Made by a program: the position numbers and the translations under genes. A stretch of 63,881 bases of DNA, filler included, from Pelomyxa schiedti (lineage: Eukaryota > Protista > Evosea), in assembly GCA_020536535.1 (NCBI GenBank). It is 9 parts of 9 records of this genome, joined end to end, with 100 filler letters (N's around TTAATTAATTAA, not from the genome) between each part and the next. Parts side by side here need not be neighbours in the genome. Positions count along the whole stretch, not along the records: positions 6,433 to 38,402 come from JAHLWZ010000995.1; 8 more parts are not named here. One strand, given 5' to 3'. This document shows, piece by piece, positions 8,705-37,900 of this stretch. How positions within the stretch are numbered: position 1 is the stretch's first letter; the number at the start of each line of letters is the position of its first letter. Under the pieces are notes generated by a model, which was not told where the DNA came from, searched no databases, and saw nothing but the letters and a program-made list of their open reading frames with translations.

Positions 8705-8980
8705 AAATATTAAAGAAATTTCTTTTTCCGTAAATATTTTATTCTCTGCTGTTGGAGGGTGGGTTGAGGGGAGTGGGAAAGGAAAAGTTCCATGCATATT
8801 CAGCAATTAGCTGTATCACTTCGACGGGAAACCTGTGGAGGACACAGCTGCGTTTTGTCCATCCAACACCCTGTTTTTAAGTGAGGGGGATGTTTTATTA
8901 TGACAGATTCACACACCAAAAGGATCACACATTTATCTCGCAAGAAGTGTGCTGGGAATGAGGTTGGCAGAGATGGTATG

Positions 8981-16500: not shown

Positions 16501-17959
16501 GGCTGATGCTGGCGATGCCAGGGCACTTTATTTTCTTGGCGTGTGCTATGGGATTGGCCACGGTGTTGACAAGGATGTTAGCAAAGCAGTCATGCTTTAC
16601 CAGCGGGCTGCCGACGCCGGGCACGCTAGCTCAATGCGCCGTCTTGGTGCCTGTTATGAGATTGGCGATGGCGTTGGCAAGGACATTCACAAGGCTGTGG
16701 CACTGTACCAGAGGGCTGCTGATGCTGGTGATGTCAAGGCAATAGGCCAGCTTGGTGTGTGTTATGGGAATGGCAACGGTGTTGACAAAGATGTTAGCAA
16801 AGCAGTCATGCTTTACCAGCGGGCTGCTGATGCTGGTGACACTGTGGCACTGTGTAACCTGGGTGTGTGTTATGAGAGTGGCAACGGTGTTGACAAGGAT
16901 GTGGGCAAAGCGCTCACACTGTACCAACAGGCTGCTAAGACCCGTCACCCCACGGCAATGCGCTGTCTTGGTGTGTGCTACGAGAAAGGACATGGTGTTG
17001 AAAAGGACATGAGCAAGGCTGTTTCACTGTACCAGGGGGCTGCTGATGCTGGTGATGCCAGGGCAATGTGCAACCTTGGTGCGTGTTATGAGAAAGGCAG
17101 GGGTGTTGACAAAGACAATCTCAAGGCTATCACGCTTTATCAGAGAGCCGCCGATGCCGGTTGTGCCACAGCATTATTCTGGCTTGGTCTCTGTTACGAC
17201 AGTGGTGATGGTGTTGACAAGGATCTGGCCAAGGCAGTCACACTGTACCAGAGGGCCACTGATGCCGGCCACGCCGCAGCAATTTGCTATCTTGGTGCCT
17301 GTTATGAGTTTGGCCACGGTGTTGACAGGGACATTCACAAGGCTGTGGCACTGTACCAGCAAGCTGCTGATGCTGGTGATGCCAAGGCAATGCGCAGTCT
17401 TGGTTCCTGTTATGAGATTGGCGATGGAGTGGACAAGGACATTCATAAGGCTGTGGCACTGTACCAGAGGGCTGCTGATGCTGGTGATGCGGGGGCAATG
17501 TGCCAGCTTGGTTCGTGTTATAAGCATGGCAACGGTGTTGACAAGGATGTGAGCAAAGCAGTCATTCTTTACCAGCGGGCTGCTGATGCTGGTGACCCTA
17601 TGGCACTGTGTAACCTTGGTGTGTGTTATGACAATGGCACTGGTGTTGATAAGGACATTCACAAGGCGGTGGAGCTGTACCAGAGGGCTGCTGATGCCGG
17701 CAGTGCCAAGGCAATGCTAAACCTTGGTCTGTGCTATGAGAATGGCGACGGTGTTGACAAGGACATTCACAACGCTACGGCACTGTTACAGAGAGCCGCT
17801 GATGCTGGTGACACCATGGCTATGTGTTGTCTTGGTGTGCGTTATGAGATTGGCAAAGGTGTGGACAAGGATGTGAGCAAAGCAGTCACGCTGTATCAGA
17901 GGGCTGCACGGCTGGGTAATCAGCGGGCTATTCGCCGACTAAAGGGACTCGGGCTATAA
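13600..17959 (+). CDS. Putatively myristoylated PINK1-like protein kinase + helical linker + 15 Sel1-like repeats
   Basis: N-terminus is MGNSNSS. Kinase motifs are IAHGCNGMVYEV, VLKVPFNY, HPNI, HFDIKLDN, IDLGC, GNPSHRAPEI and CDPEKR. The final exon carries 15 Sel1 repeats. Confidence 0.88.
16301..17920 (+). repeat. Tandem 108-nt coding repeats (15 Sel1 units) within one exon
   Basis: Recurring DNA motifs gttgacaaggac/gat and taccagagggctgctgatgctggtga at a 108-nt period. Confidence 0.92.
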
Positions 17960-20185: not shown

Positions 20186-20307
20186 GTTTTGTTTTCGGTT
20201 TTTGATCGCGCGTACGGAAATTCTTAAAAACGAAAAGGGGTGTATGAAGAAGGAACACAACAAGGATTTGGTTGTGTGAGAATAAGTTTGGCTTGTGTTT
20301 GGGGGAC

Positions 20308-22532
20308 TTAGACGAGAGGGAGTGTGATGGAGGCAACTGCCCATGGGGTGAGAGTGAGCTTGATGGAAAGGGTGGAGGACTGGAGTGTTGGTGTGATGGA
20401 TGTGGTCTTCATCTGTGAAGCATCCATGAGGGTCTGCAGCTGGGCAGAGGTGGGGTACAGCGGTGATCCCATGGCAACCCATGTAGCATAAGGGTTGGCA
20501 TTGTTGTCATCTGTGAGAATTTGGAGGTGAGTGTGGAAGCAAATCGGATTGTAGTACTGTAAACAACTATTATTAGTTTGATAGGGGAATTTTACCTATT
20601 GTTTGGAGAATGCCTGTTGGTGCTGTGGTACCCTTGTACGCTGTGGGAGAATGAGTGTGATCATCAGTTAAAAAACCAGCACGTTACGCTCACATTTAAT
20701 GGTGATGCAAATCGACTTGGTGCCAAGTGTTTCAGTGGCATAATCAAAGTTGGTAGCGAGAATAACCAAGTGGGTAGAATTCTTTGTGGCGAGAACGTCA
20801 ACAGTCTCAGAGACACTGTACGAAAACAGATTAGAGATTTGAACGCAGCATTGAAGGAACGTACTTATCATAAGTCACATCGAATCTGCTGTCTCCAGTG
20901 GCATGAAGTAGCTGGAACGCGCGATAAGCAGGTTTGGGAATGCCGTAAATAGTCTGGACACCAAATCCTTGATGGAATGGCACGCTGTCAAGACCATTCT
21001 CCTCAAAGATATCTGAGATGGTACCAGAATTAAGAAGAAAAAGAGGGTCAGAGGAGTTAGGCACCAGTGAATGTCCACCAGGAGAGAACATCAACGAGAC
21101 CGGCAACTTCTGGAATTGTCTTCACAGCCATGGAAGCGGCATAAATATTGTCGTGTAGTGATTCGGCGAACAGCCCATCGTTGTACTCGGTGTATAGAAG
21201 TGGGTAGTCTCCAGCTAACTCCCTGGTTTGTTTAATAACTTGGAGTATTGTTAACTTAACAAGTAGAGAAGACTAAAAGAACGTACCGTTGTACATGCCC
21301 TCCCTATCTTGGTTGGCATTTGGGTCAGTTGGGTACTCATGAGTACTAATGAAGTCAAGGGGAACATTGTTTTCCTCCACAAATTCGATTGTTTCTGTGA
21401 TCCAACCAGATTGGCAAGTTGCAGGACCTCCAACTAAATTGCGTCCACTTAAGTTACACAACAAAAAGCAACAATAAAAGAACCTTTCAGGTTACTATTG
21501 ACGGACTTGAGTGCCAAAGCAGTGTGTTGATACAACTCAAAGTAGTCCGCCTGTGTTCCGAACCAGAAGCCACAATTTGGTTCGTTCCTAGAGGTATGAG
21601 AAAACAAAACTAGAAGTGCTGCGGTATACCAGACTTCAAAGTACCACTGTGATACTTCAGTAAGACCATATCTAAGACACAGGTGAGGAGAAGAATAAAC
21701 CAAACAAAAAAGTTGAGTACCTATCGATAAGGTGAGAAGCAAGTGCCTCAATAAGCTGATCCCATTCAGTGTAATTTTTTGGTGGAGTAATATTTCCCTA
21801 AGACACATTTAGTTTTGGGAAAAAAAGTTTTAAAATCAATGTACCTTGTAATGGAAAATAGTTTCAGTTCCACTGGCAAGATCTGTTTTTTTGGTTATTT
21901 AAAGAAAAAGTTCTATCGGAATGGTTACCTTCCGGCATAAAACTAAGTTCAATGAGAGGTCTCATTCCCAAACTTAGAAGAAAGTCGAAAATTGAATCAA
22001 TGTTGAAAAAGCTGTAGTTTGGAGAGCCACTGTCAGGGTATCTCATATAGACACTCATGTCGTCATCCAAAATGCCGTGGAACCGAACCATTTGGGTTCC
22101 CTTTAACACTAAATTTAGACAGAACCCAACACAGTACGAGAGAATACCAGTTCTCGGTTTGTAACAGTGAGTTGATCTCTCCTGTAAATACAATTTAAGG
22201 GAAATAAAATAAAAAAGAGAATACAAGCAAGACTCACCAATCCTGCCTAAGGGCAGTCGTACCATGGCACGATCCCATACATCGTTCCCAGTAGTGATCC
22301 TATATATAGAAATTTCGTAAGTTAATACGAGCCAAGTTACGAGGTACGTGACTTGTTGGGGAAAAAACCCAGCGCTTCAACTGTTCCAAAAAGGGAAAAA
22401 ACAAAGAAAAAAACACACCCAAGTGGTAGTTGTACCAGCCAAGTCCATTACGAAGCAATCTTGTGCCCGGACAAGCGACACAGTGGCAACAACACCAACA
22501 AACAACAATAGCCCAACAACCCCACGTGCCAT
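20308..22532 (-). CDS. Secreted glycoside hydrolase family 39 (beta-xylosidase / alpha-L-iduronidase-like)
   Basis: Signal peptide MARGVVGLLLFVGVVATVSLVRA, then HYWERCMGSCHG, VRFHGILDDDM, RPLIELSFMP, YFEVW-EPN, VGGPAT, DFISTHEYP, YTEYN, GIPKPAYRAFQLL and ANPYATWVAMGSP. Confidence 0.9.
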
Positions 22533-23838: not shown

Positions 23839-25443
23839 TTAAGACAAGAGACACTTCACAGTTTCGAAAAGTTGATCTGCTGCGTCACACGAGTTTTCCA
23901 CGCACGTGACACCAACTTCAGAGACCGGCCCCAATGTGCTGAGAATGTGGAAGAATGCCCCAGTCTTTCTGTCTCCTTGCGGGAACAGCAGGCCTCTCCG
24001 GCTGAGCTCCTCCACGACCGAGTCGGCGGTTCCCTGCGCTCTGAGCTCCTCGCGGCAGTGCATGCTGTCAGTTGACACGTAGCACTTGTGAATCGGAGGC
24101 GTGTGTAGTGGTGATGGAGCGGGTGGGGCGAGGAGGAAGCCGGTTGTCTCGTCGTAGGTGCTGTTTGTGAGGTGGGACACGCAAATCATTGGGTACGTGG
24201 TGGCGCACTTGCGGGCGTTTATCTCTATGGCGTAGAGGCTCCACTTGTTGGTGTCGGAGCCAAGCACGGCGACTGTGTCGACGCTGAAGAACCCGCGGAC
24301 GCCTTTCAGTGATAGCTCTCTTCCGACTCTCTCGCCGTAGTCGTGTAACTCGGCAAAGTAGTCGCTGTTGGCTGGAAAGCAGCATCCAATGTATTTGCCC
24401 TTGTCCCCAGAAATCTTCTGCTCATGAGTGGAAACGATTTGCACTCTTCCAGAAGGGTGTATTGTGGCTTGCACACTGGGGCTGGTCTTGTCGCGGTCAG
24501 TTTCAATGAATTCCTCCACAATGGCACCGGCTCGCGCCAGTTCACTTGTCCATGCCTCCCAGTGTTCTACGGCAAGTGGTAAGCTTTCTTGAATAGCCTT
24601 ATGCAGTTCGGGGGTTTCCATCGTCTCATAATCTGAGGGTAAAGGAATTACTACATTCCCTCTTCCTGATATTCCGTCATCAATTTTTACAATGACCCTC
24701 TTTGGGTTCACCTGAATATAGGAATTACAATTTTGCTCCCCCCGTACTCTCATGCACAGAGCTAAAATTTCCCGTGCGAGTTCCGATGGGTTCATGCACA
24801 GCCTTGAGCTTCCTCGAGCGTGGGGGAGTCCGAGCCAGGCAAATATTTCTCTGGATCCGCTCTTTGTTCCCCAGTCTCTACTAGCAGTTCCTTGGCAACA
24901 CAGCGGTATACCCAAAGCTTTCGCCAAAGATATATCCAAGTCAGTCTGTGCATAAGTTTCCAGCACACAATAGTCTGCGATCGGCGGAGCGCTCACTTGT
25001 TCCAGAGTGGATGTCAACTGCCTCAGAAGAAGAGGGCTTTCCACAACTCTTCTTGTGAGAACCTTGAGGGGTTCTCCAGTGACAGCAGGCGGTGACACCA
25101 ATATTACCCTTTCAAATGGGTCAGAAAAAGTGCATCCAGAGGAGACTACAAGATCTCGATAGTAGGACAATATGTCACTAGAGAGAGGGAAACTGCTCAG
25201 AAACACCATTCGCCTTTCCGGATCTGCTAGAGTCAACAACAGCTCTCCAACAAGAGCGCGCTCGTCGTAGAAATGACGAATATTAGACACTTCACGCATC
25301 TCCTCGCACACTGTGAGGCAAAAAGCCACCAAAACTACGTTACGACTTCTCGCACTCTCTTCACCAAGATCCAGATCTGGCACAGGCCTCCCGGTGCTTG
25401 CTAGACAATCGCGCAGCTGTATCATCGCTATTTTGTTTTGCAA
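23839..25443 (-). CDS. Intronless ATP-grasp peptide ligase, PGM1-related (pre-ATP-grasp + ATP-grasp + PGM1_C-like)
   Basis: 534-aa ORF with FYDERAL, WGTKSGSREIF, VIVKIDDGISGRGN, IVEEFIE, SPSVQ, STHEQ, YIGCCFPA, AIEINARKCATTYP, YVSTDS and TGAFFHILSTL, colinear with the bacterial PGM1-family consensus as I recall it. Confidence 0.85.
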   Translation of the reverse strand: MQNKIAMIQLRDCLASTGRPVPDLDLGEESARSRNVVLVAFCLTVCEEMREVSNIRHFYDERALVGELLLTLADPERRMVFLSSFPLSSDILSYYRDLVVSSGCTFSDPFERVILVSPPAVTGEPLKVLTRRVVESPLLLRQLTSTLEQVSAPPIADYCVLETYAQTDLDISLAKALGIPLCCQGTASRDWGTKSGSREIFAWLGLPHARGSSRLCMNPSELAREILALCMRVRGEQNCNSYIQVNPKRVIVKIDDGISGRGNVVIPLPSDYETMETPELHKAIQESLPLAVEHWEAWTSELARAGAIVEEFIETDRDKTSPSVQATIHPSGRVQIVSTHEQKISGDKGKYIGCCFPANSDYFAELHDYGERVGRELSLKGVRGFFSVDTVAVLGSDTNKWSLYAIEINARKCATTYPMICVSHLTNSTYDETTGFLLAPPAPSPLHTPPIHKCYVSTDSMHCREELRAQGTADSVVEELSRRGLLFPQGDRKTGAFFHILSTLGPVSEVGVTCVENSCDAADQLFETVKCLLS

Positions 25444-25686: not shown

Positions 25687-28498
25687 TCAACCAAGGAAGG
25701 AGAGCACACCGTAAATCTCGAAGCCGGATATCACGAGGTAGTTTTTGCCGTGTGAGTTGTGTCCAGTCATTGTCACCCGAAACATTCTGAAGGACGGTGA
25801 GGATGAAGAAGGCGCTGGTGGGACATCCCAGGACCCAACATAATATGCTCCATTGATTGTCACGTCATTCGTGTGTCTCGTGAGGGTCGTCCAAGTCGTG
25901 CCGTCGTTTGATCCCCTCAGCTCCCAGTTCCGAACGTAATGGCCGCTCTGGCTATGCCTGATTGAGTACTTTGATGGCTTCACTGAACCTCCGCAGGGCC
26001 TCAGGTCCACCTGCCACCAACTGCTTCCCAGGCCCTGGTCGTTGGTGCAGTTGTAGTCCCTGCAGTCGCGGTCGAGCACGCGGTGCGGGGCGCCGTTGTT
26101 GTCGCTGGACCACGAGGCTATGACGAGGCCGGAAGTGTGGGGGTTGACGTAATTGTGGGTGTGGTTGTCGGGGTTGTGCCGCGGGTCGGGCGTGGTCCCA
26201 AGCCACCAAATGATGCCTTGTTGGTCCCAATTGTTGCTGAATGTGAATTCACGTGTAAACACTGTGTGTGTTGGGAAATTGGTTCAGAGTTAGTGATGGC
26301 CAAACATACAGTTCTCTGAAACAGTAATACAAGAGTTGATGGATTGGCGGTATACATACTGTTTGGTGTTGATAGAGCCACGACGGGGGAATTCCTTCCA
26401 TATATTCCATCTGACTCAGCCCTCACACTCACCAGGTATGTGGTTCCCCTCGTTAGGCCACCAACTTTGATTATGGGGTCACTGCCACACTTGAACTGTT
26501 GACACTGCTGCTGTTGAAGTGCCTTGGATACAAACACTGTGTATCCCGTAACTGTGATTCTTGATTGTGTACTGTTGATGTTATTTGCGGTTTGCACTGT
26601 TGGAGGAGGGTCCCATGAGAGACTGAGGGATGTTGATGTTGCTTGAGACAGTTTAGGTTCCCCCGGTGCACCGATCGCTTCTTCTATTTTGTGGTTGGAG
26701 TTTGTTTGGTGATGAATAAAAGTGAGCCAGACACACCAGGAGGGAGAATGACACCCAGCGAGGATATTGCTTCACAGCACGCAGTTTTGTCAAGAATTGA
26801 AAAAACGGCACCACTTTGACATGGTTGGAGGTTTCGCGAATCTGAAAGAGCCTTTTCCAGAGTCTTTTTATTTGCAATTGAGGTAAGTTTGGTTGCTTCG
26901 AGGGAAAGTTGTGACTGACCTCAAGAGTATCTGAGGAACGTTTGTGAGCACTGATAACGGAAATGTTTGAGGAAGACTGCATCGCAGACAGAGAATTGGA
27001 AGAGGTCCTTTCAATATTTTCCAAAATCGTGGAAAACATTGATTTCTGCCTGCTCAGGGAATCAACTAGAAACCCCCCAAACGTGTGAGTTAGAGGACGA
27101 GGGTTGTGTGGTGTGCCGTTGGTGATTATTATTATTTATTGATTATGATTATTTTTCCCCAAGTACATTGTTGGTTCCACACACACCTGTTTGTGCACAA
27201 ATGGATGATGAACTTTTCTTCAGGAACTCAATTCTGTTTCTCAACAGAACCTGCAGTTCTGCTCCAACCTTGTCCACTTCCGCTTGAAACTCCGCATGCT
27301 TCTGTGAATATAGAAAGAAGAGAGAGGGTGAGATCACGACAGCGCGAAGAGGACAACTTGATCGACAGAAGCAATCAGTTGGTCCAATTGTTGCACTGCC
27401 ACCTCCACGTTCTTCTTTTGGTCAATGATCCGCTTCGAAAGCGATGGCAGCTCCAACTTGCTTGACATACTTTGTTTGGAAAGTTCTATAAATTTGTGCC
27501 CCTTTTTTCTTGGTTAACGGTTGATCGAGTCAGGGAAAATAAGGACGTGGGAAAAAAAAAGGAGAAACCTGGTGTGAGGTAGCAGCACACAAAGAGCACA
27601 GAAGATCCGCGCAATCCGCGCAATACAATTCAATTTCCTTCTTTGGGTGCTTCGGGCAGTTGCCTGTGTGACTGTTGTGAGGAATAAAATGTCCCTAGGA
27701 ATTGGGAATTGATTGGTATTTGAACTTACTGTTTATCTCGGGAACCGCTTGCTCTAAGGGGAGCTTCAGATGAGATGCAGCACTGCGCCTCTTGTGAGCT
27801 TCTTCCCAACATCTGTCACACAATGATCCACATGCAGTGCAATGTGCGGTTGCTTTTTTATCACAGTCAACGCATGAAACTGCTCCACCTGTTCTCGTGA
27901 GTGCATAGCTTTTCTTAGTTTTGAAATCAACAATAAGAAAGGGGTGGTGGTGTGAGCATAACAATAAAAAACCCAACAGACCTGTTTTTGCCTGTTCCCT
28001 CTGCTGCAGTAGCTCAGCGAGTTGAGTGTTTGGTTCCAATTCTTTCATGCACACTGTCACTGTTGTCACTGCAGAGCACTTTGGGCACTTCACTCCAACG
28101 GTTCCATGATCCTGCCACAGTCCACAGGCAAAGCCCACAAAAAAAATATGAGAATGTGAGAAACCACACCCGCGGTGCAGAAATACACACGGGGTTGTAC
28201 GACGACGCCGAGTCACAAGCATCACCACTTGTGGCACCCGTTGGTGCTTTTGACGTCGCACCCGCGCCACAGGCGTAGCCGCCATCACAATTATGGCTCA
28301 GAGGCACGGCAAGAGCATACTGTTTGGCCACGCAACTGACAACACACCCTCGGCACATGCTGTCCCCGCACTACAATATGACAAGGCAAAAACAAGGAAT
28401 ATGAGTACCTGGAAGAGAACTGGGTCATTGAACACTCCCAGGCAAAACGGGCAGCACAGACTCGTGGCCCCGGAAGCAACCGATGTTGACCCTGCCAT
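25687..28498 (-). CDS. TRIM-like protein: RING, two B-boxes, coiled coil, FN3, HECTD1-type SUN / galactose-binding-like domain (paralog 1)
   Basis: CPFCLGVFNDPVLFQ-CGDSMCRGC...CPKC, CVDCDKKATAHCTAC, CPKHPKKEIELYCADC, FN3 SLSLSWDPP...TTYLVSVRA and C-terminal WDQQGIIWWLGT...WWQVDL...RNWELRGSNDG...ISGFEIYG. Confidence 0.85.
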
Positions 28499-29318
28499 TT
28501 GTTGTAATGAGACGAAAAGGAAGTCGACTTCCACTTTTCCTTTTTAAGCAATTTGTGGGTTCCAATTTTTTCTTTCGTACTTGAAAATACGAATCCTCTA
28601 AGCTGAAAACCCTGACACTGTTGTCTGAACCCTCGGATCAAATTGAGTGGGTAACCCAGGTGCTTGCGGTGTCTGAGAAAGTCTGGTGACAGAGCGATCG
28701 GCGCTCACAACGAAGGAAAGGTCCTGCTCATTCCGGTATACAACAGGGACTTCCTCGACCGACCAGTCCTCCCCCGTTCTGCAACGCCTACAAAGCATCG
28801 GGGTGATTTCACGGTCGGCTAAGTCTTCATTAGAAATCATTGGACTTACCGTCTCATTCTGAATCTCAACAAAACAGATTACTGTCTTGCAACAACTGCA
28901 CCAAACCTTGGAGGGTTTTGTAGAGAATAAATTGGTGTGTGTGTTACCGTGGATTGGTTCTTTGGGTTGTGAGTATTTGTGGAGTTGTTTCCACTACAAT
29001 CTCCTGTCCCTGGAAGATGAAAAAAATTCCAAAAGTAAAACTATTTTTAGTTTGTGTTTGCAGAGATTGGTTTCCTACAATTGGTGGACTTCCACACACA
29101 CTAGTTTGGGAGTGTTGAGGTGTGGAAATTATGTAGCCAGAAGGTTGTGTTGTCTTTGCTGGTTGGGGTTAGGGTATCCTGAATAAAACATCATCAATTT
29201 CCGTTATGTGGATCCCATCCCAGAGGAAATTGCAGGAACTCCAAGGAAACAACCGACCGCAAAACTCCAAAAGAAGAGCTGGAATTCGTTTTAACCTGGT
29301 TATTTTATTGAGCCACAT

Positions 29319-32300
29319 ATGTACAAATGGGAGCGCATCCAGATGGGCGTGGGAGAATCACTGGAGACAATACGTTGTGCACTAGAGCACCCTAAATGTG
29401 CCTGTAAACGTCTTGAATTAAGTGGCATGCCCCAACTCCTCTGACCAACTGACTCTCACTCACAACAAACAAGGCAACAAATTTGGTGACGAGGGTGCAG
29501 CGATCATTGCACGAGCACTTTCGTCCAACAACTCACTTGTGTCCCTGGATCTTTCCAGTATGTCGTTATCGTGTGCCCACTCATTCCTCCTTTCCTCCCA
29601 ACTCCTCTGACCAACTGACTCTCACACAAACAACCAAGGCAACAAAATTGGTGACGAGGGTGCAACGATCATTGCGCGAGCACTTTCATCCAACAACTCA
29701 CTTGTGTCCCTGGATCTTTCCAGTATGTCGTTACTGTGTGCCCATTCATGCCTCCTTTCCACCCAACTCCTCTTACCAACTGACTCACTCACAAACAACC
29801 AAGGCAACAAAATTGGTGACGAAGGTGCAGCCAGTATTGCACAAGCCTTTTCATCCAACAACTCACTTTTGTCCCTCAATTTGGAGTGTATGTCGTTGGC
29901 GCGTCTACTAATCATGCCTCCTTTCCTCCCAACTCAGATCAACTGACACACTTACAAACAAACAAGACAACAACATTGGTGATCAGGGTGCAGCAGGATT
30001 TGCACATACACTTTCATCCAACAAGTCACTTATGTCCCTTGATCTTGGCAGTATGTCGTTGGCGTGTGCCAATCATGCCTCCCAATCGGATAAACTGACA
30101 TTCACTCAAACAAACAAACAAGACAACAACATTGCTGCTGAGGGTGCAACGAACATTGCCCAGGCACTTTCATCCAACAAGTCACTTATGTCCCTAGATC
30201 TTTCTCGTATGTCTTTGTAGTGTGCCCACTCATTTCTCCTTTCCTCCCAACTCCTTGAACCAACTGACACACACTCACAAAAAAAAAGACAACAAAATTG
30301 GTGATCAGGGTGCAGCCAGTATTGCACGGACAATTTCATCCAACAGGTCACTTGTGTACCTCGATCTTGGCAGTATGTCGTTGGCACGTTCCAACCCGTT
30401 CCTCCTTTCCACCCAGCTCCTTGGACCAACTGACTCTCACTCACAAACAAACAAGGCAACAAAATTGGTATTGGGGGTGCAGCCAGTATTGCATGGGCCC
30501 TTTCATCCAACAACTCACTTGTGTCCCTCGATCTTGGCAGTATGTCGTTGATGTGTCTGCCAATCACACCCCCTTTCCTCCCAACTCCTCTGACCAACTG
30601 ACAAACAAGACAACAATATTGGTGCTGAGGGTGCAGCCGGTATTGTACAGGCACTTTCATCGAACAATTCACTTGTATCACTGGATCTTTACAGTATGTG
30701 ACTAACGTGTACCACCCGTTCCTCCTTTCCTCTCAACTTCACTCACAAACAAAAAAGGCAACAATATTGGTGATGAGGGTGGGGTGCACATTGGACGGGC
30801 ACTTTCATCCAACAACTCACTTGTGTCCCTGATTCTTTGTGGTACGTGTGCCCACTGGTTCCTCAATTCCTCCCAACTTTTTGGGCCACTGACACTCACA
30901 AACAAGTCAACAATATTGGTGATGAAGGTGCAGCGAGCATTGCACAGGCACTTTCAGCCAACAACTCACTTGTGTCCCTGGATCTTTCCAGTATGTCGTT
31001 GGCGTGTGACCCATTCCTCCTTTCTCTGCCAACTCCTCTGACCAACTGCCACACTCTCACAAACAACCAAGTGAACAAAATTGGTGATCAGGGTACAGCC
31101 GGTATTGCACGGGCCCTTTTATCCAACAATTCACTTTTGTACCTTAATCTTACAAGTATGTCGTGGTCACGTTATCATTCATTCCTCCTTTCCTCCCAAC
31201 TCCTCTGACCAACTGACACTCGCTCACAAACAACCAAGGCAACAAAATTGGTGATGAAGGTGCAGCCAGTATTGCACGGGCCCTTTTATCCAACAATTCA
31301 CTTTTGTACCTCCATCTTAGCAGTATGTCGTGGTCACGTCATCATTCATTCCTCCTTTCCCCCTCTGACCAACTGACTCTCACTCACAAACAAACAAGGC
31401 AACAAAATTGGTATTGGGGGTGCAGCAGGATTTGCACATACACTTTCATCCAACAAGTCACTTATGTCCCTTGATCTTGGCAGTATGTCGTTGGCGTGTG
31501 CCAATCATGCCTCCCAATCGGATAAACTGACATTCACTCAAACAAACAAACAAGACAACAACATTGCTGCTGAGGGTGCAACGAACATTGCCCAGGCACT
31601 TTCATCCAACAAGTCACTTATGTCCCTAGATCTTTCTCGTATGTCTTTGTAGTGTGCCCACTCATTTCTCCTTTCCTCCCAACTCCTTGAACCAACTGAC
31701 ACACACTCACAAAAAAAAAGACAACAAAATTGGTGATCAGGGTGCAGCCAGTATTGCACGGACAATTTCATCCAACAGGTCACTTGTGTACCTCGATCTT
31801 GGCAGTATGTCGTTGGCACGTTCCAACCCGTTCCTCCTTTCCACCCAGCTCCTTGGACCAACTGACTCTCACTCACAAACAAACAAGGCAACAAAATTGG
31901 TATTGGGGGTGCAGCCAGTATTGCATGGGCCCTTTTATCCAACAATTCACTTTTGTACCTCCATCTTAGCAGTATGTCGTGGTCACGTCATCATTCATTC
32001 CTCCTTTCCCCCTCTTACCAACTGACACTCGCTCACAAACAACCAAGGCAACAAAATTGGTGATCAGGGTGCAGTGATCATTGCACAAGCACTTCCATCC
32101 AACAACTCACTTTTATCTCTGCGTCTTGTCAGTATGTCGTCATAAGCCATTCATTTTTCCTTTCCTCCTAACTGACACACACAAGACAACGAAATGGATG
32201 AGAAGGGTAAAGCAAGCATTTCATGGACACCATCCAACAAGTCACGTGTACCCGGGTGTTTCTACAGTATGTAAGTTCTCATTTCCTCCTAGTCCAATTG

Positions 32301-34804
32301 ACAGGCAAACAAAGGGACCGAAAAAGAGTCACAGTCTACACCACAATTTATGTGGTTTTCCTGGTTAGTGCGTGCTACTTCTCCAATTGCTTCTATCTTG
32401 GTCTTGTTACGGGCAGAGTACAGCCATGCCTTTGTGGGTAAGACACAATACCAAATGATTTACCTTGGAATGGGTTTGCATATCATACGACTGGACAACC
32501 CAAGGATGCACAATCCGTTGGTGGATCTCTTTGCCATTCCCATTGAGATCCCAGACTCATGTTTCTCACCTCAAACACCATTTCTGAGCACTAATTCTCT
32601 CGAAGGTTCATATCCCAGTCCGAAGTCCATTGCCATTGGTGTGTAGTTTACCCCAACTGGGTAAAAAAATAAACAGGAATACCACACAGGCAAAAAATAC
32701 TCTGAGATTAATTCATGTGACCCTCCTCCTTCATCTTTGAGCCTAGTATTATCTGATCTCACCCATAAGTTGGCTTCCATGTTAAGGGACGAATTCCCAC
32801 AGCAATTGCAGACAGTTCCACAATCCACCCAGTCATTCCATGATACATTGATACCAGCGGCACTTCCTCCTATTTGTGCAACGAAAGTGATAACATCTGG
32901 GCCACTCCTGGTCACAAGAACTACCAACAACCAAGCTAGCACAAGAAGAAGTAATATTACTGCAGAAGAAGAAGGAGTGTTTTTGGAGTCTGTCAATGAA
33001 GTCTCCGTGTTGATCAAAACAATAAAACTGGCACTGGTGCAGGTATTTCAAATCTTTTCTCTTTGTTTAATCATGTGTCTTTGCAGGAAAAAGAACTTCA
33101 GTTGGTTTGTCTTCATTTATCTTTTTTTTCCAAAACACGCTCCCCAACGCTACACCTTCTTACCTTCTGCAGTATTATCAAAAGTTCACTTCTTTCATCG
33201 ATTTCAGCTATATGAGAGCCATTGAGATGGGTGACATCGACATCCCTTCTGCAAAGGTTTGAAGCCTTTCATTGGTCACTTTTTTCACTCCAACACAAAA
33301 AAAAAAGATTCTTGGAGTTGGATGCAACGGAACCACGAGCAGTGTGATGCTAAAACCAACAAACGACTGGCATATTCCAAGGAAGATGATTGAGCAAGGT
33401 GTGGCATTGAAGATGATGTTCAACTTGGAGTTTCGGCCAGGCAGTGTTGGAACCACAGAGCATCAGAGGAACCGATTTGACAAAGAGTACTACTCACTCA
33501 TTCAAAACACGCACTGGGGTGTGGCCAACATAATCAGTTTTTTTCGTAGTTACACACAGGTCTCCCCCAACAGAAACATCACCAACGTGTTTGCTGACCA
33601 CCATTCAAAAAAAGGAAGAGTTGATCCCAAGAGACAGAAAAATGTGCTTGGTTTCATCAGAGACAGGGACCCCAGTGGATCCAAGTCCCCACAACCACCT
33701 AAACTGTGTGTCAATATATGACAGAACGACATTCATCACACAGGAACTTGGATCAACCACCCTTGAAAAGACCATGCAACAGTTGATGTTACTAACAGCA
33801 TCATCATTACCACAGCAGCAGAATCGCACCGTTCCAGTTGCAACCAAAACTGCAACTGCAACCACTATCCTTCTTCCTCTTGGAATGACTAAAACTTTGG
33901 AGAACACCTTCCAGCTGCTTTCAACAGTGGACCATCTCAATAACTCATGCGGATTGTTCCACCTGGACATCAAGTCCGACAACATCCTCTTCCTTGAGAG
34001 ACCCGGCTTCACAGGCCAGTTCACTGTTCTGTGTGACTTTGGAACCTCAGTGAGCATCAACCCTTCTTCAGTAAGTGGTGTCACACCCGGGATGCTAGTA
34101 CTGGGTCTCAATGAGGTGCCGGAAGGAAACATTCTCAACAGGGCACCAGAAGCACTGAGACCAGTTTCACTGCAACCGAGGTTTTACAAACTCCCCTCCC
34201 GTCTTTTTTTTCACACTGACCTTCACACACCCACATGCTTGTCAGGTCAAGCACATTCAATGTGTCCAAGACCGACCTGTGGGCTGTTGGGTGTGTTGTG
34301 TGGCAGATGTGCTTCGGGACCACGCCGTTTACGAGCGAGGAAGCGATCACATCCAAGCCACTTATGATCCCGGCTGGTCTCCTCCGCGATTGCCCGTGCC
34401 TGTTCCATCTCCTCAAGCGGGTGTTTGACAGGAAGCCCGCAACCAGGCCCTCTGCCGGCCTCGCCTCCATCTTCGTCGGTTCGCACCTCTTCCTTACCGA
34501 TATCAACGACCTCATAACCCGCATCAAATCCACTGCCTCCGCTTCCGCTTCCAGTTCCCCATCCGCATCCGCATCCTCATCCATATCCGGCAATGCATCG
34601 TCAGGTGTGGAGTCTGTCATTGAACAGAGGTTGTGTGCTCTTAAATCACTGACGTGTGCTGACATTGACGCAATGATGGAACAGCAGAAGCACCTGGATT
34701 GGAAGGAAAGGACGATTCCAGTGAGGTTCTTCCTGCAGATGGTTTTCCTCAATCAGGCAACCCCTGCCCTCATCCTCCTTGCCCTCAACACCTTTTACCC
34801 TTAA
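29319..34804 (+). CDS. LRR-kinase: 17 single-exon RNI-type LRRs (plus 1 degenerate), linker, PINK1-like kinase
   Basis: The ATG exon is MYKWERIQ...LEHPKCACKRLEL, followed by 84-nt phase-1 LRR exons. Manual splicing stays in frame through RQTKGPKK, EYSHAFVG, GKKYSEINSC, EKELQL and YYQKFTSF into ILGVGCNG, ALKMMFN, FHLDIKSDNIL, LCDFG, GNILNRAPE, KTDLWAVG and RPSA. Confidence 0.75.
29474..32266 (+). repeat. Tandem exon+intron array (period ~150-167 bp), one LRR per 84-nt exon
   Basis: Exons checked at 29474-29557, 29639-29722 and 32048-32131 are each 84 nt. The introns are homologous too (gtatgtcgt...ttcctcctttcc...ccaactgac...acaaacaag). Confidence 0.95.
31418..31935 (+). repeat. Apparently exact 518-bp copy of 29986-30503 inside the LRR array
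   Basis: Offset 1432. The ORF-track translations 30032-30220 and 31464-31652 are identical, and the introns are identical by eye. Confidence 0.85.
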
Positions 34805-35003
34805 CTGAGGCAATCCCCGTGAACCACAAGCGGACTCGTAAGCCAAGACACCGTGCTGGACCGCCGACTCAGACCACCATCGCCCGGCTACGTGTACAAC
34901 CTTCCCAACAGAAACGGGGCTACGATTACACCATAAATTACGCCGCAGGAAAAGAGTTTAGTTTGAATGATGTGGGGTTTGTGTAACTGTACATTGTGTG
35001 GTG

Positions 35004-37737
35004 TCAAAGGGTGCTGGGTGTGACCAAGCCGTAAATCTCGAAGCCGTAAATAATGAGCACCCAGACGCCACTTGAGTTGGCACAGGTCATTGCCACAGAA
35101 AACATGCTGAAGGAGGATGTTGGAGAGGCCTGTGGGATGTCCCAGGACCCAACGCAAAACGCTGAATTGAGTGTCTGGTCATTCGTGTGCCTCGTGAGTG
35201 TAGTCCACGTTATTCCGTTGTTTGATCCCCTCAGCTCCCAGCTCCTGAGGAACCCGTCATGTTGCATGTCGTGCTTGATGGAGTACTTTGATGGGCACAC
35301 TGACAGGCCGCATGGCCTCAGGTCCACCTGCCACCACGTGTTGTGTTCCGGAGTTGTGAAGTTGCAGCACACGCCATACTCGTCCCTGCCGAGTGCAATA
35401 TACGGGGCACCATTGCCGGCACGGGACCATGAAGCGATGACGAGGCCTGAATCGTGGGGGTTGACATATTTGGGGGTGTGAGTGTCAGGGTGGTGCTTTG
35501 GATCGGGAGTGGTTCCCAGCCACCACATGATTCCTTGTTGGTCCCAGTTGCTGCTGAATGTGAACTCAAGTGGCCCTATTTGGTTTTTTGGATTTGGTTT
35601 GTTTTGGTGAAGGTTAGTGATGGTTGCCAGTAAATGGGCACCGATGTATCTTTCTAATGGGAGGGATGGAAACGCACAGTTTGGCGTTAGGAGCGCTACT
35701 GCGGGAGAGTTCCTTCCGTGGACTCCATTTGATTGTGCCCTCACACTCACCATGTATGTGGTTCCCTTCATCAGGCCTCCTACTCGGATTCTGGGCTCAG
35801 GGCCGCACTCGATTTGTTGACACTGCTGCTGTTGAAGTGCCTTGGATACAAACACGGTGTATCCTGACACTGTGCATTTTATTAGTTGTGGGCTGTTGCC
35901 GGTGGTGGATTTTAGAGGAGGGGGATCCCATGAGAGACTGAGGGACGCTGATGTTGCTTGGCATATCTTAGGTTGCCCCGGAATCCCAATCGCTTCTTCT
36001 GTTGGTTGTGGATGTGACACATTGAGATTGACTTGTTTGGTGATGGTGAATATCACACACCAGGAGGGAGGATGACACCCAGTGATGATATAGCTTCACA
36101 GTACGCTGTTTTATCAAGCAATGAAAAAGCGTCACCGCTGTCACATGGTTCGAGGTTGTGTGAATCTGAAAGAACCTTCTCCATAGTCTTTTGGTTTTTG
36201 TGTGAGTACAGTTGTGTTGAGTTATTGGATCTGACCTGAAGAACATCTGAGGAACGTTTGTGAGCACTGACAACAGAAATGTTTGAGGAAGACTGCATTG
36301 CAGACAGTGAACTGGAAGAGCTTCCCTCCAGAGTTTCCGAAATGGCAGAGAAAATTGACTTCTGCCGGTTCAGAGCCTCAACTGAAAACAAGGCACTTAA
36401 TGGAATGCAGATGTGGGCTATTTCAGACCTGTTCTTGAACAAATTGTAGCCGAACATGTCTTCAGGAAATCGATTCTGTTTCTCAAGAGTGCTTCCAGTT
36501 CTGCTCCGAATTTATCTACATCTGCCTGAAGTTTTGCGTGTTTCTGAAAAAGTTGAGTTTGAGACAACCAAAGTACATGAAAGGAGGGTGACAACCTGTT
36601 CGACAGAGGATATCGCTTGGTTTAACTGTTGAACTGCCACATCAACTTTCGTTTTCTGTTCAAGGCATCTCTTGGAAATCATCGGTAACTCTGGCTTACT
36701 TAACCCAGTTTGTTCAGACATTTCAATCAATTTGTGCCCCTATTTTATTGGTTAGGTTGTTTTCTACGGCGTATCATGCTGGAAGAAACCTGGTGGAAAC
36801 TGACAGCACACACAGAACACAGCAGATCGGTGCAGTTCACGCAATATAACTTGATTTCCTTCTTGGGGTGCTTTGGGCAGTTGCCTATGTGTTGAGAGAA
36901 AATAAGTCAATCGGGAGAAAAGGCGTCAATTAATTAGCACTTAAACTTACTGGGTACTTCAGGAGCCGCTTGCTCCAAGGGGAGCTTCACATGAGATGCA
37001 GCACTGCGCCTCTTGTGAGCTTCTTCCCAACATCTGTCACACAATGAGCCACATGCAGAGCAGTGTGCAGTTGCTTTCTGGTCACAGTCAATGCACGCAA
37101 CTGACCCTGTTAATGCAGTGAGTGATATAGGTTATTTCTTTCTTTTTCGTCCACTGGCACAACGAACCTGTTCTTGCCTGTTCCCTCTGCTGCAGTAGCT
37201 CAGCGAGTTGAGTGTTTGGCTCCAATTCTTTCATGCACTGTGACACTGTCACTGTTGTCACCGCAGAGCACTTTGGGCACTTCACTCCAACGGTTCCACG
37301 AACCTAGAGTCCGACACACACAACAAGCAGCAGAAATGAAATCTAAGCCAACCAACCCACATAAGAGAGGTGACGTAATACACACAGGATCGTAGGACAA
37401 CAACGTGGTGTGTACAGAGGCACCATCAACGGAGCCTGTGGCAGTAGCAGTTGGAGTTCTCGATGCGGACGTCGACGTGGCGCCCACGGTGTTGCTGGCC
37501 AGGGGCAGCGAGAGGGCACACTGATTTGCGACGCAGCTTACGAGGCATTTGCGGCAAATGCTGTCTCCGCACTATGGTATTGTATTGGGTGGGGGTAGCT
37601 CCTTTATGAAGATAACGACATACCTGGAGGGAGACAGGGTGCTGGAACACTCCCAGGCAAAATGGGCAGCACAGGTTTGGTAAAGTGGTCCCTGTTGCAA
37701 CTGCTGCCGCCACACTTGCGTTCGTAGATGCCGCCAT
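35004..37737 (-). CDS. TRIM-like protein: RING, B-boxes, coiled coil, FN3, HECTD1-type SUN-like domain (paralog 2)
   Basis: MAASTNAS...CPFCLGVFQHPVSLQ-CGDSICRKC...CPKC. It has the same exon layout as 25687-28498 and a C-terminal WDQQGIMWWLGT...IYGFEIYG. Confidence 0.85.
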
Positions 37738-37900
37738 CACGGCGGTTCTGGTCTTTTTCCTGGATTCTAGGGGCGGTGGTTGAGAGAATGTGAATTCCTC
37801 TGTTGGATACCTCCAAAGTAACACAAGTACACTTCATGCAGTACTTGTGTTTGCATATGACTGCATATCTGGATCAGTGGGCAGTGATTTTTTTCCCTAT

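What the first reader, a model, noticed from the sequence alone, without database searches (positions are those of the whole stretch)
32186..34804. The LRR array splices in frame into a strongly PINK1-like kinase, including a PINK1-like C-terminal helix
Seen: ILGVGCNG, ALKMMFN, RTTFI, QLLSTVDHL, HLDIKSDNIL, GNILNRAPE, SKTDLWAVG, RPSA and QMVFLNQA. Established, human PINK1 as recalled: IGKGCS, AIKMMWN, RTLFL, QLLEGVDHL, HRDLKSDNIL, GNGCLMAPE, SKADAWAVG, RPSA and KMLFLANL. No signal peptide or TM is evident. Inference: a cytosolic LRR sensor fused to a possible ubiquitin kinase, an architecture I do not recognise, in a neighbourhood rich in E3 ligases.
Basis: partly seen in the sequence, partly recalled or inferred. 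Interest (0 to 1): 0.75.

Follow-up and report, generated by a model that had tools for sequence, protein, structure and literature searches.

The report
LRR sensor fused to PINK1-like kinase
This is one intact 25-exon gene, almost certainly from the anaerobic amoeba Pelomyxa, that joins an NLR/ribonuclease-inhibitor-type leucine-rich-repeat array to a kinase whose closest known relative is the Parkinson's-disease kinase PINK1; this places a PINK1-type module outside animals and away from a mitochondrial anchor.

Summary
All nine quoted motifs are present.

- **Gene model.** A 25-exon model (29319-34804, + strand) has only GT-AG introns, consistent phases and no internal stop. It gives 3750 nt, or 1249 aa.
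- **Same fusion in relatives.** Two annotated Pelomyxa schiedti proteins (P0002, P0003, both named "NLRC3") carry the same LRR_6-plus-kinase fusion.
- **Family size.** A search of 1.84 billion proteins found only 31 relatives, 21 of them from P. schiedti.
- **PINK1 likeness by sequence.** A family profile puts PINK1 first among solved structures (106-86 bits). The next family, ULK2, scores 69 bits.
- **PINK1 likeness by fold.** AlphaFold models of the paralog P0002 align to PINK1 from the N-terminal helix to the C-terminal extension (Z 28-32, 325-380 residues). Ordinary kinases reach about Z 26.
- **Catalytic state.** All catalytic residues are intact.
- **Differences from PINK1.** There is no mitochondrial presequence or membrane anchor, HRD is HLD, and the Ser228 position is not conserved.

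Ubiquitin-kinase activity is pure inference. The E3-rich neighbourhood is not shared by paralog loci.

The parts
29319..29421 (+). Exon 1: start codon and N-terminal LRR cap (MYKWERIQMGVGESLETIRCALEHPKCACKRLEL), ending in phase 1
   Evidence: An in-frame stop lies just upstream and the donor is GT. By eye, the exon resembles the N-terminus of P0003. No hydrophobic segment.
29474..32131 (+). 17 LRR exons of exactly 84 nt, one 28-residue ribonuclease-inhibitor-type repeat each. All are phase 1-1, separated by introns of 64-83 nt, giving a period of about 165 nt. The array contains a duplication with copies 1432 nt apart (300 nt reported, 98% identical).
   Evidence: Exon scan, phase table and repeat families. 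Pfam LRR_6 reaches 21.7 bits, below the 23.4 cut-off, on a read-through ORF; the relatives P0002 and P0003 match LRR_6 at 4e-51 and 7e-37. The best solved matches of P0003's LRR are RI-like proteins, LRRC34, the unnamed chain 5irl, RNH1 and NLRP14.
32186..32266 (+). Exon 19: degenerate last LRR exon (81 nt, phase 1-1). This is the start of the finding.
32315..32638 (+). Exon 20: conserved domain of about 107 residues with no known family (FMWFSWL...YQMIYLGMG...DLFAIPIEI)
   Evidence: 35% identical to P0002 residues 414-513, E = 3e-18. No Pfam match. dN/dS 0.48 against the paralog locus L002.
32690..33042 (+). Exon 21: variable linker ending in the long helix that precedes the kinase (the counterpart of the PINK1 N-terminal extension)
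   Evidence: Aligns to P0002 and P0001. In the P0002 model the matching helix (model residues 58-99) aligns to PINK1 residues from about 115-134 onward.
33173..33256 (+). Exon 22: lead-in to the kinase (YYQKFTSFIDFSYMRAIEMGDIDIPSAK)
   Evidence: tblastn with P0001-P0004. dN/dS 0.05.
33308..33559 (+). Exon 23: kinase N-lobe. Contains the glycine loop ILGVGCNG, the catalytic Lys (33410-33412) in ALKMMFN, the alpha-C Glu in FDKEY, and HWGVANIISFF.
   Evidence: Profile positions 6-96, E = 2e-31. dN/dS 0.06. The KMMFNY motif aligns to ALKMMFNY of Tribolium PINK1.
33615..34180 (+). Exon 24: an insertion of about 40 residues between beta4 and beta5 (the position of PINK1 insertion 3), RTTFITQELG, a low-complexity insert, QLLSTVDHL, the catalytic loop HLDIKSDN (33960-33983), DFG (34035-34043) and APE (34143-34151). 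Ends in phase 2.
   Evidence: Profile positions 94-256, E = 5e-61. Pfam Pkinase 25.2 bits (1.3e-5), below the 31.7 cut-off. This exon was the query of the exhaustive search. Exon borders were fixed by homologs.
34246..34804 (+). Exon 25: kinase C-lobe (SKTDLWAVGCVVWQ, TRPSA), a Ser/Ala-rich linker, and two C-terminal helices ending in VRFFLQMVFLNQATPALILLALNTFYP. Stop codon at 34802-34804.
   Evidence: Profile positions 255-418, E = 4e-43. The tail is conserved across the family. The matching part of the P0002 model aligns to the PINK1 C-terminal extension up to residue 564-577.

Best explanation
**What it is.** The region is the 3' third of a single 25-exon gene (29319-34804, + strand) that encodes a soluble protein of about 1249 residues. 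In order, the protein has:
- a short cap;
- 18 ribonuclease-inhibitor/NLR-type leucine-rich repeats, one per 84-nt exon;
- a conserved domain of about 107 residues with unknown fold;
- a linker ending in a long helix;
- a protein kinase domain with every catalytic residue intact;
- a two-helix C-terminal extension.

**The PINK1-type cassette.** The helix-kinase-extension cassette matches the cytosolic part of PINK1 (N-terminal extension, kinase, C-terminal extension). It belongs to a family that is expanded in the anaerobic amoeba Pelomyxa schiedti and also occurs in a few uncultured eukaryotes.

**Domain swapping.** In this family the same C-terminal cassette sits behind interchangeable N-terminal interaction domains: LRR, armadillo, Sel1, MSP, actin, RING-NHL and ankyrin.

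**Likely mechanism (inferred, not shown).**
- The LRR horseshoe selects a partner or ligand and so positions or releases the kinase.
- The N-helix/C-extension bundle mediates dimerisation and trans-activation, as it does in PINK1.
- Because HRD is replaced by HLD, activation probably does not depend on an activation-loop phosphate.
- The substrate is unknown. Ubiquitin or a ubiquitin-like domain is a candidate only by analogy with PINK1.
For: **Gene model**
- Canonical splice sites, continuous phases and no internal stop.
- Exon borders match the alignments to P0001-P0004.

**The same fusion elsewhere**
- P0002 (1110 aa) and P0003 (975 aa) are annotated with the same fusion. The P. schiedti models came from Augustus with PASA/EVM and RNA data (PMC8887013).
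- The paralog locus L002 is collinear with the window from the LRR array to the stop codon at 73% nucleotide identity.

**The gene is kept by selection**
- dN/dS against L002 is 0.30 overall and 0.05-0.06 in the N-lobe exons.

**Family size and range**
- 31 hits in 1.84 billion representatives, 21 of them from P. schiedti.
- Further members come from JGI and ENA metagenomes.
- The target is sister to P0001 inside an LRR-kinase clade (SH-aLRT 96 and 98).

**PINK1 likeness by sequence**
- With profile A1, the top 12 distinct PDB sequences are all PINK1 (E = 2e-29 to 3e-23, 106-86 bits). ULK2 follows at 69 bits.
- The single family members P0009 and P0040 also rank PINK1 first.

**PINK1 likeness by predicted fold**
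- Foldseek's top 20 are all PINK1.
- VIA-align gives Z 31.2-28.3 over 318-346 residues, covering model residues 1-471 (9-471 for 5yj9) against PINK1 154-577; ordinary kinases reach 26.2 over 266 residues.
- With the upstream helix included, Z is 32.0 over 355 residues, starting at PINK1 residue 115.

**Other points**
- The invariant catalytic residues of the family are all present in the target exons.
- N-terminal domains differ between family members.
- No membrane-like segment apart from the amphipathic last helix.
Against: **Gaps in the evidence**
- No RNA evidence for the exon junctions.
- The nearest annotated relative, P0001, is modelled as kinase-only, although its upstream LRR array is simply unannotated.
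- The structural evidence comes from AlphaFold models of the paralog P0002, not of the target.
- No tree with PINK1 sequences could be built, because no tool returned PINK1 by reference.

**Results that weaken the PINK1 link**
- The single target exons do not retrieve PINK1 from the PDB.
- P0002 alone ranks AAK1 (1e-8) above PINK1 (4e-7).
- The language-model look-alike search gives only generic kinases.
- The pseudokinase PEAK1, which also has flanking helices, scores Z 28.8. The helical bundle is therefore not unique to PINK1.

**PINK1 features that are absent**
- The presequence and membrane anchor.
- The HRD arginine.
- A serine at the position that I place, by counting from the alpha-C glutamate, as equivalent to human Ser228.
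Confidence: 0.8

Rival explanations
1. The kinase is a fast-evolving, lineage-specific 'Other'-group kinase with no special kinship to PINK1. On this reading, the shared motifs and flanking helices are convergent or are ancestral features also kept by NAK kinases and PEAK-type pseudokinases.
For: - P0002 alone ranks AAK1 and BIKE above PINK1.
- The C-lobe exon alone hits AAK1, not PINK1.
- Atlas feature searches are generic.
- PEAK1 scores Z 28.8 over 350 residues.
- Identity to PINK1 is only 21-25%.
- No tree was made.
Against: - The family profile separates PINK1 from every other solved kinase by about 37 bits for the best-scoring (Tribolium) entries, and by about 17 bits for human PINK1.
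- Two other single members rank all PINK1 entries first.
- PINK1 alignments gain about 60-110 residues over ordinary kinases by covering both terminal helical parts.
- The unusual (A/V)-L-K-M-M-F-N-Y string after the catalytic lysine matches Tribolium PINK1.
Confidence: 0.12
2. The LRR array and the kinase are two adjacent genes, or alternative transcripts, on the same strand. The in-frame junction would then be an accident of symmetric exon phases.
For: - P0001 is annotated as a 555-aa kinase-only protein.
- All LRR exons are phase 1-1, so frame continuity within the array is cheap.
- No RNA data were available.
Against: - The junction passes through three non-repeat exons (32315-33256) that are conserved with P0002, P0003 and L002 and are under purifying selection.
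- No stop codon ends the LRR part, and no conserved start codon opens the kinase part. P0001's start methionine is a leucine in the target.
- Two independent annotated models span both parts.
Confidence: 0.08
3. The copy in this window is a recently duplicated, unexpressed or decaying paralog.
For: - It lies in a large paralogous family.
- It contains an internal duplication 98% identical over the 300 nt reported.
- Exact look-ups of two neighbouring ORFs found no annotated gene on record.
Against: - The gene is intact over 25 exons and 3750 nt, with every catalytic residue kept.
- dN/dS is 0.30 at dS about 0.49 against the nearest paralog.
Confidence: 0.05

Closest known systems
PINK1 (PTEN-induced kinase 1; solved structures from Tribolium, Pediculus and human)
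   Same: - It is the best match among solved structures, both by family profile and by predicted fold.
- It shares the K-M-M-(F/W)-N motif after the catalytic lysine, Q-L-L-x-x-V-x-H-L before the catalytic loop, K-S-D-N-I-L, G-N-x-x-x-x-A-P-E, S-K-x-D-x-W-A-V-G and R-P-S-A.
- It has an insertion between beta4 and beta5 at the place of PINK1 insertion 3.
- It has an N-terminal helix and a C-terminal helical extension that align over PINK1 residues about 115-577.
   Different: - No mitochondrial presequence or membrane anchor. The N-terminus is an LRR array instead.
- HLD replaces HRD.
- By my reading of the alignment, there is no long insertion 1 or 2.
- The Ser228-equivalent position is not a serine.
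- Identity is only 21-25%.
- The host is an anaerobe with hydrogenosome-like organelles.
- The substrate is unknown.
Ribonuclease-inhibitor / NLR-type LRR domains (RNH1, NLRC3, NOD2, NLRP14, LRRC34)
   Same: 28-residue repeats with the N-x-I-G-D-E-G-A-x-x-I-A-x-A-L signature and Pfam LRR_6. As I recall from mammalian RNH1/NLR genes (from memory, not checked here), the repeats are also encoded by phase-1 exons. The relatives are auto-named 'NLRC3'.
   Different: No NACHT or NB-ARC domain and no effector domain of NLR type. The array is N-terminal and is followed by a kinase.
LRRK/ROCO kinases (LRRK2, Dictyostelium Roco proteins)
   Same: Cytosolic proteins that combine an LRR domain with a C-terminal Ser/Thr kinase. 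They are common in Amoebozoa.
   Different: No Roc GTPase or COR domain was found. The LRR type differs, and the kinase is PINK1-like rather than TKL-group.
PEAK1/Pragmin pseudokinases with a split helical dimerisation domain
   Same: An N-terminal helix and C-terminal helices flank the kinase fold and form one bundle (PEAK1 Z 28.8 over 350 residues). This hints at dimerisation through the bundle.
   Different: 15% identity. PEAK1 is catalytically dead, whereas the target keeps all catalytic residues.
NAK kinases (AAK1, BIKE, GAK)
   Same: Second-best family in single-sequence comparisons.
   Different: Clearly below PINK1 with the family profile (64-68 against 106 bits). They lack the matching terminal helices (aligned 266-282 against 325-380 residues).

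Membership tests
PINK1 family | Kinase domain closer to PINK1 than to any other kinase family | tested here: met
   Profile A1 against the PDB: the top 12 distinct sequences are all PINK1, at 106-86 bits, and the next family scores 69 bits. P0009 and P0040 alone also rank PINK1 first. Caveats: P0002 alone ranks AAK1 first, and no phylogeny was made.
PINK1 family | C-terminal helical extension packed on the C-lobe | tested here: met
   The AlphaFold model of paralog P0002:640-1110 (pTM 0.83) aligns to PINK1 through residues 564-577, at Z 31.2-28.3. The tail sequence is conserved in the target exon 34246-34804. This was tested on the paralog, not on the target itself.
PINK1 family | N-terminal extension helix preceding the kinase and joining the C-terminal extension | tested here: met
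   In the model of P0002:530-1110 (pTM 0.81), helix 58-99 is included in PINK1 alignments that start at PINK1 residues 115-134, and the aligned length rises to 355-380. This was tested on the paralog.
PINK1 family | N-terminal mitochondrial presequence and outer-membrane transmembrane anchor | tested here: not met
   The protein starts about 34 residues before the first LRR. No 19-residue window reaches a Kyte-Doolittle score of 1.6 anywhere except in the last amphipathic helix. This was a simple hydropathy scan, not a dedicated predictor.
PINK1 family | N-lobe insertion 3 (between beta4 and beta5), needed for ubiquitin binding | tested here: inconclusive
   An insertion of about 40 residues sits at that place (model residues about 92-129, pLDDT about 60). 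Its sequence is not alignable to PINK1, and its placement rests on my recollection of PINK1 topology.
PINK1 family | Autophosphorylated serine (human Ser228, Tribolium Ser205), nine residues after the catalytic lysine | tested here: not met
   Counting back from the alpha-C glutamate, the equivalent position is Gly in the target and hydrophobic in most relatives. A nearly invariant Thr lies two residues later. The site numbering is from memory.
PINK1 family | HRD catalytic-loop motif | tested here: not met
   HLD in the target (33960-33968) and H-(L/M/C/S)-D throughout the family.
PINK1 family | Phosphorylates Ser65 of ubiquitin and of the Parkin Ubl domain | not testable with these tools
   Needs a biochemical assay.
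PINK1 family | Groups with PINK1 in a kinase phylogeny | not tested
   No tool returned PINK1 sequences by reference. The tree covers only the family and four unrelated kinases.
RI-type LRR (Pfam LRR_6) | Tandem 28-residue repeats that match LRR_6 | tested here: met
   17 regular repeat exons plus one degenerate exon. LRR_6 scores 21.7 bits on a window ORF, below the 23.4 cut-off, but 4e-51 and 7e-37 on P0002 and P0003. RI-like proteins are the top PDB matches.
NLR (NACHT-LRR) proteins | Central NACHT or NB-ARC NTPase domain | tested here: not met
   Nothing lies between the start codon and the LRR array, and Pfam finds no NACHT in P0002 or P0003. The database name 'NLRC3' reflects only the LRR.
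ROCO/LRRK kinases | Roc GTPase plus COR domain between the LRR and the kinase | tested here: not met
   The intervening exons (32315-33042) have no Pfam match. P0002 and P0003 show only LRR and Pkinase.

The most novel reading that the evidence does not exclude
The PINK1 module (N-helix, kinase, C-terminal extension) predates animals. In this amoeba it works as a portable ubiquitin or ubiquitin-like Ser65-type kinase cassette, aimed at different targets by swappable N-terminal domains. Here that domain is an NLR-like LRR sensor; in a paralog it is a RING-NHL ubiquitin ligase. On this reading PINK1's mitochondrial anchoring would be one late specialisation of an older family of cytosolic sensor kinases, possibly used in this symbiont-filled anaerobe for surveillance of organelles or endosymbionts.
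Probability: 0.2. Interest if true: 0.85.

Novelty: new variant of a known kind. Interest (0 to 1): 0.62.

Why it matters
**Background.** PINK1 is studied almost entirely as an animal, mitochondrion-anchored ubiquitin kinase. One survey lists PINK1 and Parkin among metazoan-specific genes (PMC3789837). A review reports them absent from the related amoeba Entamoeba (PMC9796589).

**What this finding adds.**
- This is a family of at least 20 genes that keep the whole cytosolic PINK1 architecture.
- It occurs in an anaerobic amoeba with reduced mitochondria.
- The cassette is attached to LRR, ARM, Sel1, MSP, actin or RING-NHL domains instead of a mitochondrial anchor.

**Questions it opens.**
- A natural experiment on what the PINK1 fold does when it is uncoupled from mitochondrial import.
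- A possible outgroup for working out how ubiquitin recognition arose.
- A new kind of cytosolic LRR-kinase, distinct from LRRK/ROCO proteins and from plant receptor kinases.

**Existing annotation.** The public records call these proteins 'NLRC3' or 'hypothetical'. In the papers I could search I found no description of them.

Tried and rejected
**Searches that gave nothing useful**
- Per-exon searches were weak. Pfam Pkinase scored only 21-25 bits.
- PDB phmmer found nothing for two exons and only AAK1 for the third.
- The word search with the 258-aa ORF found nothing.
- The word search with profile A1 returned only five proteins, after only the 8000 candidates sharing most words were scored; I suspect low-complexity words filled that list.
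- The trimmed profile A2 found new family members but no named PINK1.
- Atlas feature searches gave only generic kinases.
- The Atlas fold search gave an unnamed nematode cluster as best hit: TM 0.65, 375 residues aligned.

**Splice hypotheses dropped after alignment to homologs**
- An acceptor at 33724.
- A 45-nt intron at 34070-34114, which is coding in all relatives.
- A donor at 32440.

**Other ideas rejected**
- The kinase gene at 13.6-15.2 kb is not a close paralog (E = 0.01 by BLASTP and 1e-3 against the family profile).
- Exact look-ups of two neighbouring ORFs, meant to find the source contig and its annotation, failed.
- A check of intron positions in L001 by tblastn was uninformative, because the hits read through short in-frame introns.

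Exons were searched by reference, and the database paralog P0002 stood in for structure prediction.

Full report
**1. The observation**

The window is eukaryotic DNA with many short introns.

Pfam recognises a protein kinase domain in the two larger pieces only weakly, below its own 31.7-bit cut-off (25.2 and 21.2 bits; E = 1.3e-5 and 2.1e-4). Single-exon searches of solved structures gave nothing, or gave AAK1 rather than PINK1. On its own the target sequence is therefore a very divergent kinase, and the PINK1 resemblance could not be taken on trust.

**2. Gene model**

Upstream of the finding lie 17 exons of exactly 84 nt (29474-32131).
- Each encodes one 28-residue repeat of the ribonuclease-inhibitor/NLR type.
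- Each is flanked by AG and GT(ATGT) and is in phase 1-1.
- An 81-nt degenerate repeat exon follows.
- The repeat unit includes the intron (period about 165 nt), and the array holds a duplication whose copies lie 1432 nt apart (300 nt reported, 98% identical).

A start codon at 29319, just after an in-frame stop, opens a 34-residue cap that resembles the N-terminus of the relative P0003.

Downstream exon borders were fixed by alignment to relatives: 32315-32638, 32690-33042, 33173-33256, 33308-33559, 33615-34180 and 34246-34804.

The complete 25-exon model has only GT-AG introns of 48-130 nt, continuous phases and no internal stop. It totals 3750 nt, or 1249 residues.

Exons were handled one at a time by reference.

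**3. Relatives and source**

The exhaustive HMMER search used a reference covering most of the largest kinase exon (window:33726-34178). It found only 31 proteins with E <= 0.001 among 1.84 billion representatives.
- 21 of them, including all the strong ones, are from Pelomyxa schiedti assembly GCA_020536535.1.
- The best are P0001 (82% identity), P0002 (78%), P0003 (69%) and P0004 (54%).
- P0002 (1110 aa) and P0003 (975 aa), both auto-named 'Protein NLRC3', carry an N-terminal LRR_6 array and the same C-terminal kinase.
- The P. schiedti models were built with Augustus and refined with PASA/EVM and single-cell transcriptomes (PMC8887013).

P0001 is annotated as kinase-only. Its locus L002 nevertheless holds an unannotated LRR array directly upstream. 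L002 is collinear with the window from 30898 to 34805 at 73% nucleotide identity, introns included.

Codon comparison of exons 20-25 with L002 gives dS 0.49 and dN/dS 0.30. The N-lobe exons give 0.05-0.06. Both copies are therefore kept by selection.

In a family tree the target's largest exon is sister to P0001 (SH-aLRT 96), inside an LRR-kinase clade with P0002 and P0003 (98).

The window is therefore from P. schiedti or a close relative. I could not tell which, because exact look-ups of two neighbouring ORFs found nothing.

**4. Is the kinase PINK1-like?**

I aligned the kinase regions of 16 family members (A1) and searched solved structures with the profile.
- The 12 best distinct sequences are all PINK1 (Tribolium, Pediculus, human), with E = 1.9e-29 to 3e-23 and 106-86 bits.
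- ULK2 follows at 69 bits, then GAK, IRE1, ULK1 and AAK1.
- The alignment shows the unusual ALKMMFNY string after the catalytic lysine matching Tribolium PINK1 exactly.
- Two other single members also rank every PINK1 entry first: P0009 from Pelomyxa and P0040 from an uncultured eukaryote.
- P0002, the closest full-length relative of the target, ranks AAK1 (1e-8) just above PINK1 (4e-7) when used alone. The LRR-kinase subclade is thus the more divergent part of the family.

An AlphaFold model of P0002:640-1110 (pTM 0.83) gave the following.
- Foldseek returns PINK1 as its top 20.
- VIA-align places 16 PINK1 entries first, at Z 31.2-28.3 with 318-346 residues aligned. The alignments cover model residues 1-471 (9-471 for 5yj9) against PINK1 154-577, which includes the C-terminal extension.
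- The best ordinary kinase reaches Z 26.2 over 266 residues.

A second model that includes 110 upstream residues (pTM 0.81) shows a 42-residue helix before the kinase.
- PINK1 alignments now begin at PINK1 residues 115-134, the N-terminal extension helix.
- Aligned length grows to 355-380 residues, with Z up to 32.0.
- PEAK1, a pseudokinase with a comparable split helical bundle, also scores Z 28.8.

The three target exons match the family profile over positions 6-418 of 427, including the two C-terminal helices.

The support is at the level of a distant family relationship (21-25% identity), not a close one.

**5. What differs from PINK1**

- The protein has no presequence or membrane anchor.
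- HRD is HLD, and H-(L/M/C/S)-D throughout the family.
- The position that I place as equivalent to the autophosphorylated Ser228 is not a serine. This placement comes from counting from the alpha-C glutamate and rests on numbering from memory. A nearly invariant Thr lies two residues later.
- An insertion of about 40 residues sits between beta4 and beta5, where PINK1 has insertion 3, but its sequence is unrelated.
- All catalytic residues are present: the Gly loop, the Lys at 33410-33412, the alpha-C Glu, the Asp, Lys and Asn of HLDIKSDN, DFG and APE.

**6. The family**

The same C-terminal cassette follows different N-terminal domains:
- LRR_6 in P0002, P0003 and the target;
- armadillo repeats in P0005;
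- Sel1 repeats in P0029;
- an MSP domain in P0015;
- an actin domain in P0022;
- RING plus NHL repeats in P0021;
- ankyrin repeats in P0028, from the anaerobic flagellate Paratrimastix.

P0007 has a strongly hydrophobic N-terminal region. That arrangement would be closer to PINK1's own topology.

A sister clade comes from JGI and ENA metagenome contigs of up to 1.1 Mb.

**7. Mechanism (inferred)**

- The LRR horseshoe most likely provides target or ligand recognition.
- The N-helix/C-extension bundle probably mediates dimerisation and trans-activation, as in PINK1.
- The non-RD catalytic loop suggests independence from activation-loop phosphorylation.
- Ubiquitin or a Ubl domain as substrate is possible only by analogy. 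I put it at about 0.2.

**8. Neighbourhood**

- The gene is flanked on the minus strand by two paralogous TRIM-like genes. They have a B-box at E = 0.005, below Pfam's cut-off, and a C-P-F-C-L-G-V-F RING-like string seen by eye only. FN3 clears its cut-off only in the 35.0-36.1 kb copy, and F5/8 type C only in the 25.7-26.3 kb copy.
- An F-box gene lies at 18.0-20.5 kb.
- The loci of P0002 and P0001 have unrelated neighbours: sulfatase, Ras, ARID, RasGEF and another LRR-kinase. The E3-rich setting is therefore not a conserved feature.

**9. Literature**

- PINK1 and Parkin are listed among metazoan-specific genes (PMC3789837).
- They are reported absent from Entamoeba (PMC9796589).
- An oxymonad genome paper reports no PINK1 ortholog (PMC6759080).
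- I found no paper describing PINK1-like kinases in Amoebozoa or this LRR-kinase architecture. Much of the literature is not in the searchable library.

**10. Limits**

- No phylogeny includes PINK1, because no tool returned PINK1 sequences by reference.
- The structural evidence is from models of a paralog.

**Verdict.** This is a real, intact gene. It is a new architectural variant built on a PINK1-type kinase module, and it belongs to an undescribed family that is largely specific to Pelomyxa.

Noticed in passing
window 13600-17959 (+); tail of a second copy at 6631-8704 (+): Tandem genes encoding an N-terminal MGNSNS (possible myristoylation) divergent kinase (IAHGCNG, VLKVPFNYG, HFDIKLDNVVV), then a helical region, then about 15 Sel1 repeats (Pfam Sel1 1e-148). 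The kinase is only marginally similar to the PINK1-like family (E = 1e-3), and the domain order is the reverse of the Sel1+kinase protein P0029.
   Followed up: partly
window 29949-30248 versus 31381-31680: A duplication inside the LRR array, copies 1432 nt apart (300 nt reported, 98% identical), at LRR exons 5-6 and 14-15. It is either a very recent exon-block duplication or an assembly artefact. All LRR exons are symmetric (phase 1-1, 84 nt), so any subset could be skipped in frame.
   Followed up: partly
window 25687-28641 (-) and 35004-37837 (-): Two paralogous TRIM-like genes flank the LRR-kinase gene. Each has a RING-like C-P-F-C-L-G-V-F string (seen by eye only; Pfam found no RING on the exon pieces), a weak B-box match, and FN3 or discoidin-type domains; fn3 clears Pfam's cut-off only in the 35.0-36.1 kb copy and F5/8 type C only in the 25.7-26.3 kb copy.
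   Followed up: partly
P0021 (Pelomyxa schiedti KAH3764912.1, 1125 aa): A family member that fuses a RING finger and NHL repeats (a TRIM-NHL-like E3 ligase architecture) to the same PINK1-like kinase cassette. This is a direct physical link between a ubiquitin ligase domain and this kinase type.
   Followed up: no
P0007 (Pelomyxa schiedti KAH3744917.1, 665 aa); also P0010: P0007 has a strongly hydrophobic N-terminal region (58 windows with a Kyte-Doolittle score of 1.6 or more, maximum 2.52) ahead of the PINK1-like kinase. It may therefore be a membrane-anchored member, closer to PINK1's own topology. P0010 has a signal-like hydrophobic N-terminus.
   Followed up: no
L002 6087-7500 and about 8600-8900: The public model of P0001 looks incomplete. 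An LRR array directly upstream is unannotated. The exon that encodes ALKMMFN...SYTQ is present in the DNA (84 codons, dN/dS 0.06 against the window) but is skipped in the annotated protein.
   Followed up: partly
window 17996-20482 (-): An 828-codon ORF with an F-box (24.7 bits) that contains a very GC-rich (0.65), Gly/Arg/Ala low-complexity stretch at about 19.4-20.4 kb. Several long overlapping ORFs on both strands there are probably compositional artefacts.
   Followed up: no
window 23839-25443 (-): A single long ORF with an IQCH-like ATP-grasp domain (1e-16). The exact sequence is not on record in the gene-position index.
   Followed up: partly
L003, L004 (ENA assembly ERZ26167977, contigs of 1.04-1.11 Mb): An uncultured eukaryote carries several short members of the family (412-641 aa), called here as uninterrupted ORFs. 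Some have Cys-rich N-termini (MKGCC, MC) that look like lipid-anchor sites. The taxon is unknown.
   Followed up: partly
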